63,496 nucleotides of DNA, filler included, from Octopus bimaculoides (GCF_001194135.2; 7 parts of 7 records of this genome joined end to end with filler, not necessarily neighbours in it); one strand, 5' to 3'; shown: positions 38,161 to 49,928, numbered from the whole stretch's first letter. The notes: generated from the letters alone by a model not told the origin. Numbers and translations: made by a program.

Positions 38161-38601
38161 AACAAAATTAGACAATACGACGCTGTACTACAGATGACAT
38201 CATTTGGAACCACAAGAGATTTAACTGAGGCAGTATTCATCCAAACTTTCAAGATCCAACCTCAGATTTATCATCGCATTGTCTCTCTACTACCTCTGTC
38301 AAATGAATCACCAAAATTGGCCTTTCATTATTTATAATCTGTACCTGTTTGTTTGGTTACAAAATAAAATACACAAGATGTGTTTCTGAATTACGTGTAT
38401 TTACTTTATATACATATGAGTTGAAAACTTTCTTCTAGCATTCCACTTAATGTCTATGTTCCATGCTGGCATGGATTGGAGAGTTATTAATGTAGAAATA
38501 CGGTATTGTAGCTACTAACAGTTGAGGGTTGCGTAGTCTACATGGCGTTTTTAGATTTCATTATTCTCTTTAACCTGGGCAACACCGGGTATTTCTACTA
38601 G
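38161..38601 (+). mobile_element. Helitron remnant (Rep fragment and 3' terminus)
   Basis: 38161 reads NKIRQYDAVLQMTSFGTTRDLTEAVFIQTFKIQPQIYHRI (cf. YNSAFQMTSFG...TFKIQGQVYHRIG). A GC-rich hairpin CCTGGGCAACACCGGG is followed by CTAG then T at 38598-38602. Confidence 0.7.
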
Positions 38602-39277
38602 TTTTTAATAAAAAAATCAAATGAATACCCTATTATATGTCCGAGGTCAAATTATTTATACATCATAAGTATGGAAGTAATTGGTGAAGCTGTTTTCGCC
38701 TGAAAAGTGAATATGCTCACATCTCTATTTTATATATTATATATACATACATATATATATACACATATATATATATATATATATANNNNNNNNNNNNNNN
38801 NNNNNNNNNNNNNNNNNNNNNNNNNNNNNNNNNNNNNNNNNNNNNNNNNNGTGTGGTGGCGTGATCTGGGAATGGTGTGGGATATGTGGGTGTAGGAGCA
38901 GGGGTGGGGTATGTGGGAGGGGTGTGGTTGGAGGGAGTATCAATGAAGAGAGAGGTGGGTAGGAGTAAAGAAAGGAAGTAGATGTCAGAGAAAGAGAGGA
39001 GAGGTGAGGTGGGTAGGAGTAAAGAGAGGAAGTAGGTGCCATGAAGAAAAGAGAGGAAGGGAGTCAGATGAAGAAAAGAGGGGAGTTGAGCCCATGTGGC
39101 ACAAGGGAGTGAAAAGAGAAGGTGTGTGTGTGTAAAATTAATATAAACCCACAAGATCCACTCCCTGGGAAGTTATTTTCTTTCACTCCTGGAAAATGTT
39201 ATATCTTTTCACGACATTTCTTTCCTGTTCTTTATTTGCATCTCAAGTATAATTTTTATGAATGCATTTCATTTTAG

Positions 39278-39427
39278 GATACTGTTGAATATGTTGTGTT
39301 TGGTAGTAATGTGGAAAAATGTAAGCTATGTAAAAATCTTAAAACTGCATCAACATCTCCTAAAAAGATTAATCGAGCCCAACAAACCAGACAACCTGAA
39401 GAGGTCAACCTTACTAAACAGGAACAG
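39278..39427 (+). CDS. Tandem CxxC-repeat exon, copy 1 (150 nt, phase 0-0), unidentified gene
   Basis: TTTTAG / GTGGGT. DTVEYVVFGSNVEKCKLCKNLKTASTSPKKINRAQQTRQPEEVNLTKQEQ. Confidence 0.7.
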
Positions 39428-39807
39428 GTGGGTGTTTATATTGTGATATATTTCATCTAACTGTGTCCATTTATTATTTAGTTACCAAGTTGATATATCA
39501 TCACTTAATGTTCACTTTATCATGTTCGCACGGATAAGATAGAATTTGTTGATGCCAATTTTCTATGGTTGAATGGTTTCCTATTGCCAACCCGCAACTC
39601 TCCTCTGTTTAAAAGCAAGATAGTATTTCATCATAGAAAACAGAACATAAACAGTATTGCTTGTATGATGGTGACATTCAATTGCAATTATCACATGATG
39701 CCAAGACAAGAGTACAAATACACATGCATGTGCATGCACACACAGCCACACATGCACACATACATGCATGCACTCACACACACACACACATGCACACATG
39801 CATACAT

Positions 39808-39847
<40 letters not shown>

Positions 39848-39934
39848 GATAAGGTCCTTTCCGGGGGCTGATCATAAATGTCTGCACAGAGTGCAGCTTT
39901 TAAGCTAGTAATTTATATAACCGTTTCTTTTTAG

Positions 39935-40096
39935 GATAATGTTAATTATACAATGGCTGGTAGAAGGATGGAAAGATGTAGGATATGTAAAAATTTTAAA
40001 GTTGTTTCAACATCTGATCCACCTAAGGAGATCAGTCAAGCCCAAGAGACCAGAGAACCTAGAGAAATTGACATAGACCTTGCTAAACAAGAACAG
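39935..40096 (+). CDS. Tandem CxxC-repeat exon, copy 2 (162 nt)
   Basis: TTTTAG / GTAGGT. DNVNYTMAGRRMERCRICKNFKVVSTSDPPKEISQAQETREPREIDIDLAKQEQ. Confidence 0.75.
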
Positions 40097-41649
40097 GTAG
40101 GTTTATATTACATTTTATTCTGTATCCAGGTAAATATAGTTATCATGATCTCTCTCTCATGTTTGTATATATATCATCATCATCATTTAACATCTGCTTT
40201 CCATGCTGGTGTAGGTTGGGTGGTTTGACAGGAGCTGGCCAGGCAGAAGACTACACCAGACTTCTGTGTCTGTTTTGGCATTGTTCTTACAGCTGTATAC
40301 CCTTCCTAATACCAATCACCCAACAGTGATGGCATCAGCACAGGTGAGATCAGTTTTGGCATGATTTTTACTGCTGGATGCTTTTCCAAATGCCAATCAC
40401 TTGAAAGTGTGGACTGGATGCTTTTTATGTGGTACCAGCACAGGCAGGGTCACCAAGTAACTTGCAAGACAAGGAACCTTTGAGAGAGGAACCTTTTAAA
40501 CATTAAATGGCTATGGGGTGGGGACAGGGAGTGGTCCACCAGAATAAAGTAGTAATCAAAGGGGACCATAGGTGAAAAATGGTTGAGAACCATTAATCTA
40601 GAGGTTCCCTCATTGCATCTTTATGTTGCTGTTGTTATTGTTGTTGTTTAGCCTTAGGTCATTTCTGATCATGCAGACTTTTGATTAAAAGGCATTCCAG
40701 TTGTGTCCATCACACCTTTCTATGTGTTCCAGGCACAATGTCTCAAAGGTGACATTACTAGAGTATCCTGCTTTAAAAAAGGAAATGTGTGATTTGAGGG
40801 AGTTGGCTTCTTCTTCAGGCAAGTTATGCCTCCATGTAGGAGCTGGAAATGTCATGGATACTCCTCTTATTTCTCAACTATATCATGAACTACACACTCA
40901 CAATCCAAATGCACACACACGTGTATGTGTGTGTGTGTGCGTGTGTGAGACTGTGTGCGTGCATGCATGTCTGAGTGTGTGTGTGTGTGTGTTTGTGTCT
41001 GTGTCTGTGTGTCTATTCATAGCCATATATTTAACCTTACTGTAGAATGTTTAAACCACCAAGATTTCTTATTTGTAGAATAATTTCAAAAAGAAATTTG
41101 TAATTTAAGGAAGTTGGCTACGATTCCTAGCAAGTTATACCTCCATGTAGGAGTTGTAAATGTCATGGAGACACCTCTTACTTCCTAACTACATCATGAA
41201 ATACGCAGTCACAATCCAAATACACACACACGTGTGTGTGTGTGTGTGTGTATTTATTAGCAATAGTCATGAGACAGAGTGCCTACAGATAAGTTGTAAA
41301 TATATTTACATGCATAGCCATATATTTAACCTTACCGTAGAATATTTAAACCATCAAATCTCTCTTCTTAGAACGATTTCAAAAGGAACTCAACTTAATT
41401 TCATCTGGTTGCTACCAGCTCATCACCTGTATTAACTTTATCTCTTCTATAAATTTTCACTCGTCTCATTTTTCATAATGAGCTTTAACTCTGTGTTGAA
41501 TGCATTGCTTAAACGAACAGACAAACTGGTTATGACTGTGTTGTTCAATATTGTAGAGTTCTGATTGTTTAACTATATTTTTCTAATATATCTACTTGTA
41601 AATTCATTTGCATCTCAAGTATAATTGATATACCTGTGATTCTTTTTAG

Positions 41650-41811
41650 GATACTGTTAAGTATGTAGTGGCTGGTAATAAGATGGAAAGATGTAAGATA
41701 TGTAAAAAGTTTAAAGTTGCTTCAACATATGCTTCACCCAAAGAGATCAGCGAACCCCAAGAGACCAGGCAACCTGGAGAAATTGACATAGACCTTGCTA
41801 AACAAGAACAG
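41650..41811 (+). CDS. Tandem CxxC-repeat exon, copy 3 (162 nt)
   Basis: TTTTAG / GTAGGT. DTVKYVVAGNKMERCKICKKFKVASTYASPKEISEPQETRQPGEIDIDLAKQEQ. Confidence 0.75.
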
Positions 41812-43154
41812 GTAGGTTAATATTATATTTTATCTCTATCCAGATAAACGTAGTTATCAAAATCTCTCTCTCATATATCTATACATATAGATTTGACATG
41901 GGCGACTCTTTCTTGTCTTCGGATTCACGGTCAAACAGCTGGGTGGAATTGTGCGAAAAATTTCACAGATGCCCCCATGGTTACCTAGATAATCTACTAT
42001 AATAATACTCTTGTGTTTATGAATGAGAAATGAAGGGGTGATAGATGAATAAGGAAGGAAGGGGTGATGTCATACTTGGTAGTGGGATGATGAAATTGTA
42101 TGCTGAAAAAAATAAATCAAACAGTGTTTCAACTCTGTGTGAATATACGTTTGTGTATGTAAAAGGGGAGGGGGGTATGTGAATGTGTGTGTGTGTGTGC
42201 ATGTGTGTGTGTGTGTGCGTGTGTGTGTGCATGTCCACGTGCAATGGAAATAGGATGGTTCATCTTTGTTCGCTTAGTATTTGGGTTTATTTTTTGATTC
42301 GATTGAATCTTGGTTGGTTTCTCTTTTTGTTGGTCAGTTATTTTAGCGTTTTGACCGAAGTCACTCTAAAATTGTCTNNNNNNNNNNNNNNNNNNNNNNN
42401 NNNNNNNNNNNNNNNNNNNNNNNNNNNNNNNNNNNNNNNNNNNNNNNNNNNNNNNNNNNNNNNNNNNNNNNNNNNNNNNNNNNNNNNNNNNNNNNNNNNN
42501 NNNNNNNNNNNNNNNNNNNNNNNNNNNNNNNNNNNNNNNNNNNNNNNNNNNNNNNNTATATATATATATATATCATTATCATCACTTAACATCCATTGTC
42601 CATGCTGGCATGGACTGGATAACTTGATGTGAGCTGCAGTCTGATTTGGTATGGTTTCTACAGCTGGATGCCCTTCCTAACGCCAGCCACTGTATATATA
42701 TATATGTATATATATGATGTCATGTAGCCCCAGTTGAATTTGATTGAGGAGATTTAAGATCAAAAACATCCTGGCATGGCCATCCTTTCTATTACATGAA
42801 ACAGCTTGATTTCTTCCTCTGATGTTTTACGTACTTAGTTGAACCAATACAAGTTCATCATCATCATCATCATCATTTAACATCCGTTTTCCATGCTGGC
42901 ATGGGTTGGACGGTTTAACTGGGAACTGGCAAGTCAGGAGGTTGCACCAGGCTCCAATCTGATCTGACGGTGTTTCTACAGCTGGTTGCCCTTGCTAACA
43001 CCAACCACTCCGAGAGTGTAGTGGGTGCTTTTTACATGCCACCGGCACGGGAGCCAGTCAGGTAGCACTGGCATTAGCCACATTTTTCTACTATATCTAC
43101 ATGTAAATTTATTTGCATCTCAAGTATAATTGATATACCTGTGATTCTTTTTAG

Positions 43155-43316
43155 GATACTGTTAAGTATGTAGTGGCTGGTAATAAGATGGAAAGATGTA
43201 AGATATGTAAAAAATTTAAGGCTGTTTCAACATCTGCTTCACCCAATGAAATCAGTGAACCCCAAGAGACCAGGCAACCTGGAGAAATTGACATAGACCT
43301 TGCTAAACAAGAACAG
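43155..43316 (+). CDS. Tandem CxxC-repeat exon, copy 4 (162 nt)
   Basis: TTTTAG / GTAAGT. DTVKYVVAGNKMERCKICKKFKAVSTSASPNEISEPQETRQPGEIDIDLAKQEQ. Confidence 0.75.
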
Positions 43317-43387
43317 GTAAGTTAATATTATATTTTATCTCTATCCAGATAAACATAGTTATCAAAATCTCTCTCTCATATATGTGT

Positions 43388-43428
<41 letters not shown>

Positions 43429-43964
43429 CAAGAAATGAGGGCAGGGAATCGTCAATTAATAATAGAATTAACAATTAACAATTTTGCCAAGTAGTTCAGT
43501 ATGAAATAAACCTTTATCGGTAAGACCATTTATCATCATAAATATAAGGGATTAGCAATTGAGTTGCTTCTCCAACATACTGAAAATTCAGAAACAGCAG
43601 TCAAAGAACTACCGCTTCTAAACTACAAATTTTTCTCTAAAACGGATGGCGATATTTATGGCACACATAGAACAAAAATTGTTAATTGTTAATTCTANNN
43701 NNNNNNNNNNNNNNNNNNNNNNNNNNNNNNNNNNNNNNNNNNNNNNNNNNNNNNNNNNNNNNNNNNNNNNNNNNNNNNNNNNNNNNNNNNNNNNNNNNNN
43801 NNNNNNNNNNNNNNNNNNNNNNNNNNNNNNNNNNNNNNNNNNNNNNNNNNNNNNNNNNNNNNNNNNNNNNNNNNNNNNNNNNNNNNNNNNNNNNNNNNNN
43901 NNNNNNNNNNNNNNNNNNNNNNNNNNNNNNNNNTTTAGAGACACTTTCAAATTTATCAGAATAT

Positions 43965-44027
43965 TTGGGCTGAAGATTGGAATAGTGAAGTTTTCGTTCG
44001 CTTAACCATGAAACGATTCGTACCCAA
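43965..44027 (+). ncRNA. Type I hammerhead-like motif
   Basis: Stem I UUGGG/CCCAA; core CUGAAGA; stem II UGG...CCA extended by AGUGAA/UUCGCU; GAAA; stem III ACGA/UCGU; GUA triplet (predicted cut after 44022). Confidence 0.65.
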
Positions 44028-44207
44028 TTAACTAAAGGCTTGTTTTGTTTGTGCTTTTCCCTCCGGTTTTTTGTTCTATGTGTGCCATAAATATCGCCAT
44101 CCGTTTTAGAGAAAAATTTGTAGTTTAGAAGCGGTAGTTCTTTGACTGCTGTTTCTGAATTTTCAGTATGTTGGAGAAGCAACTCAATTGCTAATCCCTT
44201 ATATTTA

Positions 44208-44241
<34 letters not shown>

Positions 44242-44391
44242 TCATCATCATCATCCTCACCATTTGTTGACCATGCTGGCATGGATTGGATGGCTTGATG
44301 TGAGCTGGCAAGCTGGGGAGCTGCACCAAATCAGACTGGAATCTAATTTGGTATGTTTCTACAGCTGGATGCCCTTCCTAATGCCAGCCAC

Positions 44392-44422
<31 letters not shown>

Positions 44423-44778
44423 TCATAGAAAACTATGTAATTGTTACCAATATAGCAGGAATTTTCACCGCAAAAAAATCTAAATTAGACTCCTTAGGGA
44501 TTGTTCTTGTTTATATATCCAAAGTTTTAAATTTTTACATTTAAGAGAGAGATTTGACGCTAATATCCACTATTAATGTAATTTATTCCTATGTATTTAT
44601 ATATATATATATATATATATATGATATTGTGTAGCCCCAGTTGAATTTGATTGAGGAGATTTATGGTCAAAAACATCCTGGCATGGCCATCCTTTCTATT
44701 TTGCTTTTCAGATCACATTATTCAGTATCCCCTTCTTTTTATGACACTGTTTCCAACAGGTTATGTGACCATCTAGAG

Positions 44779-45075
44779 CAATGTTTCTCAAATGGGAGCC
44801 TATATAAGATTTTTGGGGATTCGTGAAAAGATTGTGGCTTATATGTATTTATTACATGAAACAGCTTGATTTCTTTCTCTAATGTTTTACTTAGTTCAAC
44901 CAACACAAGTTAATGAGTGAAAATCGAAATATGAATTTTGAAAGAAGTACCTATAAAATTAGCTTTTAAACATCAAAAGGCTATGGGTTGGGGACTGGCG
45001 GGCAGGGGTGGAGGTCCACCAGAATAAAGTAGTAATCAAAGGCGACCATAGGTGAAAAGTGGCTGAGAATTACTA
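44779..45075. mobile_element. hAT (Buster-type) MITE with 8-bp TSD
   Basis: Ends CAATGTTTCTCA / TGAGAATTACTA. TSD ATCTAGAG (44771-44778) / ATGTAGAG (45076-45083), with central TA. A paralogous right end plus ATCTAGAG lies at 40500-40603. Confidence 0.65.
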
Positions 45076-45826
45076 ATGTAGAGGTTCCCTCATTATATCT
45101 TTATGCTGCTGCTGTTGTTTTGTTGTTTAGCCCAAGGCCAGTTCTGGTCATGCAGACTTTTGATTAAAAGGCATTCCAATTGTGGCCATCATACCTTTCT
45201 TTGTGTTTCAGGCATAATGTCTCAAAGATGATATTACTAGTGTATCCTATTTTTAAGAAAGAAAATGTCTAATTTGAGGGAGTTGGCTTCTACTTCTGGC
45301 AAGTAATGCCTCCAGGTAGGGGCTGTAAATGTCATGGACATTCCTCTTACTTCCTAGTTATATCATGAACTACACAGTCACAATCCAAATGCACACACAC
45401 GTGTGTGTGTGTGTGTGTGTATTTATTAGCTTCAGTCCTGAGACAGTGCCTACAGATAAGTTGTAAATATATTTACATGTATAGCCATATATTTAACCTT
45501 CCTGTGAAATGTTAAAGCTACCAAGATCTCTTTTTGTAGAATGATTTCAAAGGGAACTAAACTAAAATTCACCTGGTTGTTATCAGCTCATCAGCTGCGT
45601 TTACTTTATTTCTTCTATCAATTGTTACTTATCTCATTTTTCACAAGTAATTGTAAACTACTGTTCGCCTGTGTTAAATGTATTGCTTAAATGTTGCAAA
45701 CAAGTTTGTTATGAGCAAGTTGTTCAATTTTGTAGAGTTCTGTTTGTTAAAATATATTTTTCTAATATCTATATGTAAATTTATTTGCATCCCAAGTATA
45801 ATTCATTTAACTGTTCTTCTTTTTAG

Positions 45827-45988
45827 GATACTGTTGAATATGTAGTGGCTGGCAGTAAGATGGAAAGATGTAAGATATGTAAAAAATTTAAGTTTGTTTC
45901 AACATCTGCTTCACCCAATGAAATCAGTGAACCCCAAGAGACCAGAGAACCTGGAGAAATCGACATAGACCTTGCTAAACAGGAACAG
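45827..45988 (+). CDS. Tandem CxxC-repeat exon, copy 5 (162 nt)
   Basis: TTTTAG / GTAGGT. DTVEYVVAGSKMERCKICKKFKFVSTSASPNEISEPQETREPGEIDIDLAKQEQ. Confidence 0.75.
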
Positions 45989-47011
45989 GTAGGTTTATAT
46001 TATATTTTATCTCTCTCTGCAGATATACATTATTATCAAGATCCCTCTCTTTTGTGCTTATATATCATCATCATCACAAGTGGCTTTCGAGATGGAAAGC
46101 AATAAAGAGGGTTTTCCTTCTATGAAAAGAAGGCAACAATTTTTTACAAAATCCCTTGCCAGATTTGCATGTCAAACTCTCTGATGTTTGTTTTTTTAAA
46201 AAAGGAAATGTGTGATTTGAGGGAGTTGTCTTCTTCTTCAGGCAAATTATGTCTCCATGTAGGAGCTGTAAATGTCATAGATACTCCTCTTATTTCCCAA
46301 CTATATCATGAACTACACACTCACAATCCAAATGCACACACACACACACAAGCACACACGCACACGCATACATGTGTGTGTATTTATTAGTAATAGTCTT
46401 GGGACAGAGTACCTTCAGATAAGTTGTAAATATATTTACATGTATAGCCATATATTTAACCTTGTTGTGGAATGTTTAAACTACCAAGATCTCTTTTTGT
46501 TGAATGATTTGAAGAACTCAAGTAAATTTCACCTGGTTGTTACCAGCTCATCAGCTGTATTAACTTTGTCTCTTCTAGCAATTGTTACTTGTCTCATTTT
46601 TCACAAGTAGCTGTAAACTACTGTTTCGTTGTGTTGAATGTCATGCTTCTCCCTTTTGATACCAACCTGCCTGAAATTGCTTCTGGCTCTATAGTACGAA
46701 TGTCTTGTTTTCAAAAGTTCTGAATTAAAATCTTCCATCAAACCTTTGTCACAATTTATGTTGCTAACACTAACTTAATGATAATTAAGTTACTTTACTA
46801 AATTCTTTGTTATATTTAGAATTAATTGAAAGAAACACAGAGCATCTCAACAGAAATATGGTAACAAAAGAGTTAAGCATACAGACAAACTGGTTATGAC
46901 CAAGTTGTTCAATTTTGTAGAGTTCTGTTCATTTAACTATATTTTTCTAATATCTACATGTAAATTTATTTGCATCTCAAGGATAATTTATATAAGTATG
47001 TTTGTTTTTAG

Positions 47012-47173
47012 GATACCGTTAAGTATGTAGTGGTTGGTAGTAAGATGGAAAGGTGTAAGATATGTAAAAATTTTAAAGTTGCTTCACCATCTGCTTCACC
47101 CAAAGAGATCAGCGAACCCCAAGAGACCAGACAATTTGGAGAAATCGACATAGACCTTGCTAAACAAGAACAG
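47012..47173 (+). CDS. Tandem CxxC-repeat exon, copy 6 (162 nt)
   Basis: TTTTAG / GTAGGT. DTVKYVVVGSKMERCKICKNFKVASPSASPKEISEPQETRQFGEIDIDLAKQEQ. Confidence 0.75.
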
Positions 47174-47299
47174 GTAGGTTTATATTATATTTTATCCCTC
47201 TCCAGATTAACGTTGTCATCAAGATCTCTTTCTTGTGTATACATGTATATTTATGCATCAAAAACCAAGGAACCATTTTTTAGGTATTCTGAGCCTAAA

Positions 47300-48790
47300 A
47301 CAAGGGACTCAATGGCATCAACCCTATGTGAGATCCCAAAGATTAGAGATCTGTTGCATAAAACCCTGTCAAGTCAATAAACCAAATTTCTTTCATGAGG
47401 ACTGAAGTTCACCCCCAACATCACAAAAGTTGAATTTAAATGAGATGCAGAACAATGTCCAGGAATTCTGTAGAAAATTTTGAGTCACTGAAGAAGTATT
47501 TGATAAAGAAATTAATGATCATTCAATACTTCATAATAAAACCAACTATAGTCTGACAAAAGGGAGAAACCAAACTCTGGATAAATTTCATGATTTAGTA
47601 TCCAATTTCCCCTATAATTTACTCCTTCATTGGAAATTGAAAACAAATACAAGCTGAGAAGAATGGGAAATCATTAATGATCTCAAGGATGATCATAATA
47701 TAGTTATCAAACAAGCTGATAAAGGGAGTTCTGTAGTCATCATGGACAAGAACAATACATAAACACTACCCTAACCCTTCTTCAAGACAATACCTACTAC
47801 AAAAAAATCAACAGTCAATCTAAAATAATGACAAAGTTTACTACCCTCATCTATCAGTTCCAACAATATTTAATGGAAAAGAAAAATTTAACTGCAAACC
47901 CAGTAACTTTTATGGACTTCCAAAAATTCACAAGAGTGAAGCCATAAATGAAGCATGTAGCAGATCAACTTCGTTAGTCATTAATATTCCACATCCAAGA
48001 GATCTCAAAGTGAAGCCAGTTGTGGCTGGTCTGTCCTGTGAGACATACAGACTGAGTAACTTCATTGACATCCTCCTAAAACTTATTCTTCAACATATAC
48101 TGAGCTTCATAAGAGATGACCTGAACTTTTTAAACCATATCCTGAACAAAACCAGCATAGACTCTCCTTTGGTCTCATTCAACATAATAAATCTCTACAC
48201 CTCAATTCCTCATGAATACAGAATAGAAGCTATATAATTCTGGCTGGAAAAATTCCCAAAGAAGATTCCTGACCGAATTGAAAAAGGATTTATCATTGTG
48301 GGACTGAAATTCATCTTAACTTCTTTAATTTCAATGAAAACACCTAAAGACAAAAATCTGGGACTGCAATGGGAACAAGGTTAGCCCCCATTTTTCTTAC
48401 CTTGTCATGGCATACTTATAAATCTAAATATATGAACACGCCAGACTGAAATTTGGTGTCAACTTCCAAAAATACTTACTCACCAACTGGAAATGTTACC
48501 TGGACAATTGCTTCATTCTGTGGTCACATAACCTTCATGGACTTTGGAATTTGAAAAGTTAATTAACAACATTAACCACAACATCCAGTTTGCAATGGAA
48601 TACAGTCACAAACTTCGACCCTTTCTAAACATTTTAACCATAAAAAGAGATATTAGCATAGAAACTGACATCTCCTGTCAACCAACAAACTCAAAACAAT
48701 ATCTATTATCTTCTTCCTGCCATCCAAAGTATACTAAAATCAATATACCTTTTAACTTGGCAAGAAGAATTTGCATGATTGCAGCAAAAA
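47300..48790 (+). mobile_element. Decayed Penelope-like element reverse transcriptase
   Basis: Frameshifted pieces GLKFTP, VIKQADKGSSVV, FYGLPKIHK, SFNIINLYTSIPH, SGTAMGTRLAP, NIQFAMEYS, PTNSKQYLLSSSCHPKYTKINIPFNLARRI. These are PLE-type RT motifs. Confidence 0.85.
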
Positions 48791-48867
48791 TAATGTATTT
48801 TCTTTAAATAAGCAATTCAATTTTTTTACAACTCAAGTTTAATTTATATAAATGGATTTCTTTTTAG

Positions 48868-49011
48868 GATACTGTTAACTACACAGTTGTTGGTAGTAAG
48901 ATGGAAAGATGTAAAATATGTAAAAATTTTAAACTTGCTTCAGCATCTGCTTCACCCAGAGAGATCAGTGAACCCCAAGAAATCAGCAGAGATTTTGCTA
49001 AACAAGAACAA
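48868..49011 (+). CDS. Tandem CxxC-repeat exon, copy 7 (144 nt)
   Basis: TTTTAG / GTAGGT. DTVNYTVVGSKMERCKICKNFKLASASASPREISEPQEISRDFAKQEQ. Confidence 0.72.
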
Positions 49012-49664
49012 GTAGGTGAAATAAATTAGACAGTCTTTTCAATTTATTTAACAAAGAGAGCTTTATGTTTTAACCATTTGCACAGGTCAGTAAATGTATG
49101 GTTATTAAATGTACATTTGCAAATTCATTTACAAATTACATATGTAACATCTTCATCATTATTTAACACCCATGTACCATGTTGATATGGGCTGGACATC
49201 CACTACTACTCACTTCATACCCTGAGATGTCACCCGAACACCACTATTTATCCCTTTATCTCTTTGGAGACGCTACTGATTCATTCTCGCTCTCTCCTGT
49301 AAATGCGAGTAGTCATGTAGTCCCTCTATAAGGACCAGCTCTACCAAGATCCTTTCACTCAAACCTGAACTCCCATCTGGCATAAAGACACATCTCTTTA
49401 CTCTCCTCCTCTGGTTATGTAGGCTTGTGGGCAGCATGGCACTTTCACTACTGCCAGTGGCACAAAAGTTAGTGCCCAGTAGATACTGTAAAGTGGTTGG
49501 TGTTTGAAATGGCATCCAGCTGTAGATACCCTGCAAAAGCAGACACTAGAGCATGATGTTGTCTTTGAACCTATCAGATCTTCTCAGACTGTCCAATCCA
49601 TGCCAGCATAGAACATGGATGTTAAATGATAATGAAGTTTTATAACTAGCAAGTTAGTTTTTGT

Positions 49665-49928
49665 TTGTGGCAGATGTTCAGGTGCAATAAAGACTGTAAA
49701 CAAACAGGAAACAACTTCTATCTCATTCCAGGGTGAAAAACTAGAGGTAGTCGATAGCTTCCGCTATCTGGGCAACCAAGATAGTAGTGGGGGTGGGTGC
49801 ACTGAAAGTGTAGCTGCTAGAATAAGAATAGCCTGGGCAAAGTTTAGAGAGCTCTTACCCCTGCTGGCGACAAAGGGACTCTCACTCAGAGTAAAAGGCA
49901 GACTGTATGATGCATGCGTACGAACAGC
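49665..49928 (+). mobile_element. RTE-clade LINE fragment (C-terminal RT region)
   Basis: GEKLEVVDSFRYLGNQDSSGGGCTESVAARIRIAWAKFRELLPLLATKGLSLRVKGRLYDACVRTA; runs into the gap. Confidence 0.85.

What the first reader, a model, noticed from the sequence alone, without database searches (positions are those of the whole stretch)
39278..49011. Array of seven tandem phase-0 exons encoding an unrecognised CxxC repeat
Seen: seven exon-like units of 150, 162, 162, 162, 162, 162 and 144 nt. All keep TTTTAG acceptors and GT donors, all are stop-free in the same frame, and both length differences are multiples of 3. The introns meanwhile have accumulated indels and MITE, PLE and RTE insertions. Invariant residues: D-x-V-x-Y-x3-G-x3-E-x-C-x2-C-K-x2-K-x2-S...P...I...KQEQ, with a Ser/Pro/Glu-rich second half. 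I recognise no family. Inference: a lineage-specific modular protein (CxxC knuckles on flexible linkers, possibly pairing to bind zinc), or a cassette or mutually exclusive exon bank, since symmetric exons can be included in any combination. Start and stop exons are not visible on this 11.8-kb contig.
Basis: partly seen in the sequence, partly recalled or inferred. Interest (0 to 1): 0.85.

Follow-up and report, generated by a model that had tools for sequence, protein, structure and literature searches.

The report
Repeat exons of an octopus BTB gene
The seven repeated units are real coding exons, already in RefSeq, from the repeat region of an uncharacterised Octopus bimaculoides BTB-BACK protein; the repeat is confined to Octopus, evolves fast and has no known function, but the feature itself is ordinary.

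Summary
There are seven + strand units of 150, 162 x5 and 144 nt, each with a TTTTAG acceptor and a GTRRGT donor, and only one frame is open in all seven. Both N gaps lie in introns.

The units are not unannotated. Joined together, they equal residues 1164-1531 of XP_014781255.1 (Octopus bimaculoides LOC106876992 isoform X1, 1768 aa). That protein has an N-terminal BTB + BACK pair closest to KEAP1/KLHL, about 800 fast-evolving residues, 12 CxxC units, and a Cys-rich tail. The window holds units 4-10.

RefSeq isoforms drop whole units: X2 and X3 in O. bimaculoides, and 14 isoforms of O. sinensis LOC118765495. This fits cassette use, not mutually exclusive use.

The repeat matches no Pfam family and no PDB chain. 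In 1.84 billion representative proteins its only real match is this gene. AlphaFold gives no fold (pLDDT about 32).

Against O. sinensis the frame and splice sites are kept: no stops or frameshifts where about four of each are expected. Yet the exons diverge faster than their introns (9.5% vs 6.8%), with pN about equal to pS. Signs of exon-limited gene conversion and unit gain and loss are present.

The biochemical function (a Cul3-adaptor-like scaffold with a multivalent CxxC tail) is inferred, not shown.

The parts
39278..39427 (+). Unit u1: 150-nt phase 0-0 coding exon (50 aa). It is repeat unit 4 of 12 in LOC106876992 and the orthologue of O. sinensis exon sD.
   Evidence: It is 94.0% identical to L001 36312-36461.
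39935..40096 (+). Unit u2: 162-nt coding exon (54 aa). It is the orthologue of O. sinensis sX, which carries an in-frame 18-nt deletion and is in none of the 14 O. sinensis isoforms.
   Evidence: Against sX it has 12 nonsynonymous and 0 synonymous differences.
41650..41811 (+). Unit u3: 162-nt coding exon. It is included in isoform X1 and skipped in X2 and X3. It forms a recent duplicate pair with u4.
   Evidence: u3 and u4 are 95% identical in the exon and 94% over 317 nt including flanks.
43155..43316 (+). Unit u4: 162-nt coding exon, skipped in isoform X3. It lies between the two assembly gaps.
45827..45988 (+). Unit u5: 162-nt coding exon, orthologue of O. sinensis sF by its flanks.
   Evidence: Flanks are 95.9% identical to sF but the exon only 88.9%.
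47012..47173 (+). Unit u6: 162-nt coding exon, orthologue of O. sinensis sG by its flanks.
   Evidence: Intron identity is 94.1% and exon identity 86.4%. pS is 0.245 against an intron divergence of 0.059, a sign of exon-limited gene conversion.
48868..49011 (+). Unit u7: 144-nt coding exon (48 aa). It is repeat unit 10 of 12 and the orthologue of O. sinensis sH.
   Evidence: It is 92.4% identical to L001 55260-55403, with 10 nonsynonymous and 1 synonymous differences.
41812..43154 (+). Intron 3, containing assembly gap 42378-42556 and SINE-like copies. No hidden unit.
43317..45826 (+). Intron 4, containing assembly gap 43698-43933 inside a foldback insertion. The inverted-repeat arms are 43535-43678 and 44068-44211, 100% identical.
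47174..48867 (+). Intron 6, with a decayed reverse-transcriptase-like insertion that O. sinensis carries at the orthologous place.
   Evidence: Window 46258-48370 aligns to L001 50329-52397 at 92%. The translation is full of stops. Pfam gives no hit.

Best explanation
The seven units are genuine, already annotated coding exons. They are repeat units 4-10 of the 12-unit C-terminal array of Octopus bimaculoides LOC106876992.

This is an uncharacterised protein of 1768 aa. It has an N-terminal BTB + BACK pair like those of KLHL/KEAP1-type Cul3 adaptors. Then come about 800 poorly conserved residues, the repeat array, and a Cys-rich tail.

Each exon encodes one module of 48-54 aa. The first ~22 residues are basic and carry the D-x-V-x-Y...G...E-x-C-x-x-C-K core. 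The next ~30 residues form an acidic linker rich in Ser, Pro, Glu and Gln.

Shown:
- The array grew by tandem duplication of exon-plus-intron blocks of about 1-2.5 kb.
- It still gains and loses units between species.
- It keeps phase-0 symmetry, so any unit can be dropped without breaking the frame.
- RefSeq isoform models do drop whole units.
- Selection keeps the frame, the splice sites and the CxxC core. The remaining residues change at about the neutral rate or faster.
- The middle units show signs of exon-limited gene conversion.

Inferred, not shown: the BTB-BACK head dimerises and may dock to Cul3. The repeat array, which sits where KLHL proteins have their Kelch propeller, would then be a multivalent, length-tunable binding or metal/thiol-reactive region.
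For: - Identity: the 368-aa concatenation of the seven exons is an exact match to residues 1164-1531 of P0020 = XP_014781255.1.
- Orthologues: O. sinensis LOC118765495 (14 isoforms) and O. vulgaris CAI9729897.1.
- Domains: BTB E=3e-20 and BACK E=2e-15. The closest solved relatives are KEAP1, KLHL3, KLHL11 and KBTBD2.
- Isoforms: they differ by whole units.
- Duplication: the duplicated blocks include the introns.
- Frame and splice sites: kept across species, with 0 stops and 0 frameshifts against about 4 of each expected.
- Paralogue comparison: exons are more alike than their flanks, and dN/dS is 0.16-0.6 for most pairs.
- CxxC core: both Cys are kept in 26 of the 28 distinct units collected from the three species. 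One second-Cys codon is a synonymous TGC, in sD. The only Cys-less unit, unit B, lost both Cys together.
- Turnover and conversion: u3/u4 is a duplicate pair in O. bimaculoides where O. sinensis has one exon (sE), and O. sinensis has sP plus sF where the window has u5 alone. All four middle units of O. sinensis share ATG where all four window units have GAR. u6-sG pS is 0.245 against intron divergence 0.059.
Against: - No read-level expression data could be examined. The isoforms are Gnomon models.
- The first 58 nt and the last 60 nt or so of u3 and u4 are identical, so short junction reads cannot tell u2-u3 from u2-u4.
- O. sinensis X2/X9/X12 and X10 contain chimeric units that look like mapping or assembly artefacts.
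- Between species pN is about equal to pS (0.094 vs 0.101, p=0.69), so most residues show no purifying selection.
- AlphaFold finds no fold, with or without a 24-row alignment (pLDDT 31.5 and 32.0).
- Nothing here tests Cul3 binding, metal binding or any partner.
Confidence: 0.85

Rival explanations
1. The array is translated but is essentially a neutral, disordered spacer. Tandem exon duplicates are tolerated so long as they keep the frame. The CxxC has no specific role, and unit number and sequence drift freely.
For: - Pooled pN 0.094 is about equal to pS 0.101 between species.
- Unit number differs between species, and one copy (sP) is truncated.
- No fold is predicted.
- Unit B lost both Cys and is still included in the models.
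Against: - The CxxC pair, D1, Y5 and the KQEQ end are kept in nearly all of the 28 distinct units, although the oldest paralogues are only 61-69% identical at the nucleotide level (sA against the window units).
- dN/dS among paralogues is mostly 0.16-0.6.
- u2 and u7 show 22 nonsynonymous against 1 synonymous change, which looks more like directional change than drift.
Confidence: 0.25
2. The units are zinc-binding half-sites. The CxxC knuckles of two units, neighbouring or on the two chains of a BTB dimer, pair to form Cys4 zinc sites. Exon skipping would then change the number of metal cross-links.
For: - There is one strictly conserved CxxC per unit after a predicted beta-hairpin.
- Both Cys are lost together in unit B.
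- The tail adds one more CxxC (CHYC) plus CCCC and CC clusters.
- BTB domains dimerise; this is established knowledge and was not tested here.
Against: - No His or further Cys is present within a unit.
- The spacing between knuckles is about 50 residues of linker for which AlphaFold gives no confident structure.
- No zinc-finger Pfam family is matched by any unit or by the full protein.
- AlphaFold does not bring the two knuckles of a two-unit construct together with any confidence.
- No PDB sequence match.
Confidence: 0.2
3. The units are pseudo-exons of a tandem genomic repeat that gene predictors stitched together. They are not part of a real mRNA.
For: - All the supporting proteins are computational models (XP_ and CAI accessions).
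- Some O. sinensis models contain chimeric units.
Against: - Frame, splice sites and in-frame-only indels are kept in two species against neutral expectation (P about 0.015-0.018 each).
- Independent annotations in three species include the array and continue into a conserved Cys-rich tail, 86.7% identical.
Confidence: 0.04
4. The repeat derives from a known domain or transposon: DUF6076, or a TE open reading frame.
For: The seven-unit concatenation scores 37.9 bits against PF19553 (DUF6076), above its 23.5-bit cut-off.
Against: - The match covers only profile positions 46-66 of 168.
- Single units give nothing at E<=10.
- The full-length proteins that contain the same units give no DUF6076 hit.
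- The score is therefore one weak chance match multiplied by near-identical copies.
- No other family is matched, no PDB chain, and the profile search of 1.84 billion proteins returned only this gene plus three weak, unrelated repeat proteins.
Confidence: 0.02

Closest known systems
KLHL/KBTBD-type BTB-BACK Cul3 substrate adaptors (KEAP1, KLHL3, KLHL11, KBTBD2)
   Same: The full-length protein has an N-terminal BTB followed by BACK. Its best PDB sequence matches are these proteins, E from 5e-18 to 5e-16. A repeated C-terminal region follows the BACK domain.
   Different: It has no Kelch repeats. The C-terminal part is about 800 low-conservation residues, then 12 CxxC units of 45-54 aa, then a Cys-rich tail. 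The BTB-BACK part lies outside the window. Cul3 binding was not tested.
Arrays of tandemly duplicated, phase-symmetric cassette exons in repeat proteins (for example titin PEVK exons and nebulin repeat exons; from general knowledge, not tested here)
   Same: There is one repeat module per exon. All exons are phase 0-0 with lengths that are multiples of 3. Introns were duplicated together with the exons. Unit number varies between species, and isoforms skip whole units.
   Different: The module is different and unclassified, the array is small (12 units), and it is known only in the genus Octopus.
Dscam1-type clusters of mutually exclusive duplicated exons (from general knowledge)
   Same: Tandem duplicated exons of equal length with homologous flanks.
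   Different: The models include many units in series, not one per cluster. No pair of genuine exons is used alternatively. No docking or selector sites were looked for.
Rad50 zinc hook (two CxxC motifs from two chains share one zinc; from general knowledge)
   Same: Each module has a single CxxC and so cannot bind zinc alone. The protein is probably a dimer through its BTB domain.
   Different: There are no flanking coiled coils and no sequence similarity. Metal binding is untested.

Membership tests
BTB-BACK-Kelch (KLHL) Cul3 adaptors | BTB/POZ domain | tested here: met
   PF00651, E=3e-20, residues 46-150 of P0020. This lies outside the window but in the same gene.
BTB-BACK-Kelch (KLHL) Cul3 adaptors | BACK domain after the BTB | tested here: met
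   PF07707, E=2e-15, residues 170-254.
BTB-BACK-Kelch (KLHL) Cul3 adaptors | C-terminal Kelch beta-propeller repeats | tested here: not met
   No Kelch family is hit in P0001, P0018 or P0020. The C-terminus is the CxxC array.
BTB-BACK-Kelch (KLHL) Cul3 adaptors | Binding to Cul3 through BTB and the 3-box | not testable with these tools
   Needs co-immunoprecipitation or modelling of the complex.
Pfam DUF6076 (PF19553) | Match to the family profile over most of its length, above the gathering score | tested here: not met
   Only profile positions 46-66 of 168 are matched, and only in the artificial concatenation. There is no hit for single units or for the full proteins.
Zinc knuckle / zinc ribbon modules | Four metal ligands (Cys/His) within one module | tested here: not met
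   Each unit has two Cys and no His. No zinc-finger family is matched by any unit or by the full protein.
Zinc knuckle / zinc ribbon modules | Pairing of knuckles between units or chains to bind zinc | not testable with these tools
   AlphaFold on two and four units gives pLDDT about 32. A metal analysis is needed.
Symmetric cassette-exon repeat arrays | All exons are phase 0-0, have lengths that are multiples of 3, and share one frame | tested here: met
Symmetric cassette-exon repeat arrays | Origin by tandem duplication of exon plus flanking intron | tested here: met
   Homologous flanks of up to about 800 nt between units.
Symmetric cassette-exon repeat arrays | Transcripts that include or skip individual units | tested here: inconclusive
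   RefSeq isoform models skip whole units. However, they are predictions, some are chimeric, and no reads could be inspected.
Mutually exclusive exon clusters | Exactly one exon of the cluster per transcript | tested here: not met
   Model X1 includes all seven units in series.

The most novel reading that the evidence does not exclude
The CxxC exon array could be an adaptive, combinatorially spliced recognition module of an octopus-specific Cul3-type adaptor. Its diversity would come from unit birth and death, exon-limited gene conversion and positive selection: exons diverge faster than their own introns, and u2 and u7 carry 22 nonsynonymous against 1 synonymous change. That would resemble fast-evolving immune or reproductive recognition genes, with the CxxC pairs forming inter-unit or inter-chain metal or disulfide links whose number is set by exon choice.
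Probability: 0.12. Interest if true: 0.6.

Novelty: new member of a known kind. Interest (0 to 1): 0.27.

Why it matters
The practical result is to lower the priority of this finding. The 'unrecognised exon array' is an annotated gene, and its missing ends are known.

What remains of interest is modest but real:
- The ~50-aa CxxC module is unclassified, and with these searches it was found only in the genus Octopus.
- It is attached to a KLHL-like BTB-BACK head in place of a Kelch propeller.
- It shows an unusual signature. Frame, splice sites and the CxxC core are conserved, while the exons diverge faster than their flanking introns.
- Unit turnover and apparent exon-limited gene conversion have occurred since two congeneric species split.

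This makes it a compact natural case for studying how tandem exon arrays evolve in cephalopods. It is also a candidate lineage-specific ubiquitin-ligase adaptor whose targets are unknown.

Tried and rejected
- The search for homologous proteins with the 368-aa concatenation found nothing. This was a false negative of the word prefilter, because P0019 and P0020 contain the query exactly.
- The DUF6076 Pfam hit was rejected. Single units and full-length proteins do not hit it.
- The Nkap_C hit of u2 (15.6 bits, cut-off 25) is noise.
- The weak profile hits P0002-P0004 are unrelated repeat proteins, and at most 28 of the 54 profile positions are matched.
- AlphaFold on four units without an alignment, and on two units with 24 rows, gave pLDDT 31.5 and 32.0. 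No fold search was run because it would be meaningless at that confidence.
- A PDB profile search with the unit pair found no match at E<=1.
- The look-up of encoding contigs failed for X4 and X1 and worked for X2.
- The Argonauta hians locus holds the BTB-BACK and middle region, but the 10-kb flank does not reach any Octopus-type unit. Presence of the repeat outside Octopus is therefore undecided.
- Pfam on the TE-like remnants (RT-like at 47.4-48.8 kb, RTE-like at 49.65-49.93 kb, Helitron-like at 38.16-38.33 kb) gave no supporting hit.
- Literature searches for the gene, its accessions and DUF6076 found nothing.
- Other frames and the other strand were rejected as coding. Only frame +0 is open in all units.


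Full report
**1. Observation**

The piece 38161-49928 was read in full.
- 39278-39427, 150 nt
- 39935-40096, 41650-41811, 43155-43316, 45827-45988 and 47012-47173, 162 nt each
- 48868-49011, 144 nt

All are on the + strand. Each follows TTTTAG and is followed by GTGGGT, GTAGGT or GTAAGT.

Only frame +0 is free of stops in all seven units. Frame +2 carries 7-11 stops per unit, and no reverse frame is open in all of them.

A profile scan of the + strand frames of the piece finds these seven units and no eighth.

**2. Assembly gaps**

Both flagged N runs lie in introns: 42378-42556 in intron 3 and 43698-43933 in intron 4.
- Gap 1 corresponds to about 212 nt of O. sinensis intron that holds no unit.
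- Gap 2 sits between the arms of a perfect 144-nt inverted repeat (43535-43678 and 44068-44211). It is therefore inside an inserted foldback element.

No exon frame depends on the gaps.

**3. What it is**

A word-indexed protein search with the concatenated units found nothing. This later proved to be a false negative.

An exhaustive HMMER search with the seven-unit profile against 1.84 billion representative proteins gave one strong hit, P0001 (E=1.4e-193, nine matched stretches). The three other hits were weak and unrelated.

P0001 is XP_036363633.1, 'uncharacterized protein LOC118765495 isoform X4' of Octopus sinensis. It is one of 14 isoforms.

A second search, with the non-BTB part of that protein, returned only three clusters: O. 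sinensis, O. vulgaris (CAI9729897.1) and O. bimaculoides (A0A0L8GHP2).

The O. bimaculoides cluster holds isoforms X1-X3 of LOC106876992. The 368-aa concatenation of the seven window exons is an exact substring, residues 1164-1531, of X1 (XP_014781255.1, 1768 aa). X2 lacks u3, and X3 lacks u3 and u4.

So the window is O. bimaculoides, and the seven units are annotated coding exons. They are units 4-10 of a 12-unit array.

**4. The whole protein**

Pfam finds BTB (residues 46-150) and BACK (170-254) and nothing else. In particular there is no Kelch. The BTB-BACK part is closest in the PDB to KEAP1, KLHL3, KLHL11 and KBTBD2.

After it come about 800 residues of low conservation, the repeat array, and a tail with CHYC, CCCC and CC clusters.

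Amino-acid identity between O. bimaculoides and O. sinensis by region:

| Region | Identity |
|---|---|
| BTB-BACK | 96.3% |
| Middle region | 85.7% |
| Repeat array | 82.5%, plus 113 gap columns |
| Tail | 86.7% |

**5. The repeat module**

Each unit has a basic first half (net charge +3 to +5 in u2-u7) carrying the D-x-V-x-Y...G...E-x-C-x-x-C-K core. The second half is acidic (net -2 to -6) and rich in Ser, Pro, Glu and Gln.

Across the 28 distinct units from the three species, D1, Y5, C15, C18 and the KQEQ end are kept in nearly all. The only Cys-less unit, unit B, has lost both Cys in all three species.

No family claims the unit:
- Single units match nothing relevant in Pfam.
- The DUF6076 score of the artificial concatenation disappears in the real full-length proteins.
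- No PDB chain matches the unit profile.
- AlphaFold gives pLDDT about 32, with or without a 24-row alignment. It shows only short strands around the CxxC.

**6. Origin and splicing**

Self-comparison shows that whole exon-plus-intron blocks were duplicated. Homologous flanks reach up to about 800 nt, interrupted by SINE-like, foldback and RT-like insertions.

The 14 O. sinensis isoforms differ by removal of whole units:
- X4 lacks unit I.
- X5 lacks unit C.
- X6 lacks unit B.
- X7 lacks unit G.
- X8 lacks F and G.
- X11 lacks F through I.
- X14 lacks C through G.
- X13 ends after unit H.

This is cassette-type variation, not mutually exclusive variation.

Caveats:
- The isoforms are Gnomon models.
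- The alternative unit of X2/X9/X12 is the 5' half of exon sE fused to a 5'-truncated genomic copy (sP, L001 46200-46319) that has no acceptor.
- The unit of X10 is an sE/sG chimera.
- u3 and u4 are identical over their first 58 nt and their last 60 nt or so. Short junction reads therefore cannot prove that u3 is skipped.

**7. Evolution**

The O. sinensis locus was fetched as L001 and its units were mapped.

Orthology is clear for three pairs:

| Pair | Exon identity |
|---|---|
| u1-sD | 94.0% |
| u2-sX | 91.7% |
| u7-sH | 92.4% |

By flanking introns, u3 pairs with sE, u5 with sF and u6 with sG.

Unit content differs between the species. O. bimaculoides has the young pair u3/u4 where O. sinensis has sE. 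O. sinensis has sP plus sF where O. bimaculoides has u5.

Within the window, paralogous exons are more alike than their flanks. dN/dS is 0.16-0.6 for most pairs and about 1 for u2 against u3 or u4.

Between species the picture reverses. Pooled exon divergence is 9.5% against 6.8% for 4575 aligned intron bases (Fisher p=0.004). pN is 0.094 and pS 0.101.

Even so, no stop and no frameshift has arisen, where about 4.0 of each are expected (P=0.015 and 0.018). The single exon indel is 18 nt.

Two processes seem to be at work:
- **Exon-limited gene conversion in the middle units.**
  - u6-sG pS is 0.245 against 0.059 in the surrounding 1.9 kb of intron.
  - u5-sF flanks are 95.9% identical but the exons only 88.9%.
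  - All four O. sinensis middle units share ATG where all four window units have GAR.
- **An excess of replacement changes in the single-copy-like units.** u2-sX has 12 nonsynonymous and 0 synonymous changes. u7-sH has 10 and 1. This suggests positive selection or relaxed constraint, but the counts are small.

**8. Breadth**

With these tools the repeat was found only in the three Octopus species.

Argonauta hians has a BTB-BACK homologue (66% identity) and a recognisable middle region (32% identity). The 10 kb of flank held does not contain an Octopus-type unit. It contains instead a 691-aa open frame of 13-aa 'KPQQQVCCYSNDVS' repeats. Whether the 54-aa unit exists outside Octopus is undecided.

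No paper mentions the gene, its accessions or DUF6076.

**9. Mechanism**

Shown:
- The units are coding exons of a BTB-BACK protein.
- They have a symmetric exon structure.
- They arose by tandem duplication.
- The frame, the splice sites and the CxxC core are conserved.
- The remaining residues turn over quickly.

Inferred from family knowledge:
- The BTB-BACK head dimerises and may recruit Cul3.
- The array occupies the position of the substrate-binding propeller of KLHL proteins. It would then act as a multivalent, length-tunable interaction region.
- The CxxC pair is its only strongly constrained chemistry, so metal or thiol-based pairing between units or chains is possible but untested.

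**10. Verdict**

The module itself is unclassified and evolves in an unusual way, which gives it modest interest.

Noticed in passing
L002 18013-20085 (Argonauta hians BAAFZT010000086.1): About 7 kb downstream of the Argonauta BTB-BACK homologue lies a 691-aa single-exon open frame made of roughly 45 tandem 13-aa 'KPQQQVCCYSNDVS' repeats. It is annotated as part of a 1915-aa product. The C-terminal region of this gene family may be Cys-repeat-rich in other octopods too, but with a different unit.
   Followed up: partly
L001 38200-38343 (O. sinensis), orthologue of window 39935-40096: Exon sX has an intact frame, a TTTTAG acceptor and a GTAGGT donor, plus an in-frame 18-nt deletion. It is used in none of the 14 O. 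sinensis RefSeq isoforms. The O. vulgaris and O. bimaculoides models include its orthologue.
   Followed up: partly
window 43535-43678 and 44068-44211: A perfect 144-nt inverted repeat brackets assembly gap 2. It is a foldback or MITE-like insertion in intron 4, and the gap is probably the unassembled centre of the hairpin.
   Followed up: partly
window 47400-48800: This is a decayed reverse-transcriptase-like sequence with an FYGLPKIHK motif and many stops. It is present at the orthologous intron position in O. sinensis (92% identity over 2.1 kb), so the insertion predates the species split. Pfam gives no hit, and the 'PLE' label rests on memory only.
   Followed up: partly
window 38161-38330 and 49650-49928: The contig ends carry TE-like coding remnants: a Helitron-like 'FGTT...IYHRIVSLLP' stretch at the 5' end, and a non-LTR RT C-terminal-like 'FRYLGN...RIRIAWAKFREL' stretch at the 3' end. 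Pfam did not confirm either.
   Followed up: partly
window 40173-40328, 42572-42691, 42857-43018, 44231-44392, 49485-49644 (-): Five copies of a SINE-like element of about 150 nt ('...CATCATCATTTAACATCCGTTTTCCATGCTGGCATGGGTTGGA...') are scattered through the introns and the 3' flank.
   Followed up: no
window 38851-39120: A purine-rich block just after the first gap (38786-38850) contains 54-nt and 27-nt tandem repeats. From 39006 onward it aligns with the O. sinensis intron upstream of sD.
   Followed up: no
tool behaviour: The word-indexed protein search missed proteins that contain the query exactly. With the BTB-BACK query it listed only the Argonauta homologue. 'No hit' from that tool should not be read as absence.
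   Followed up: yes
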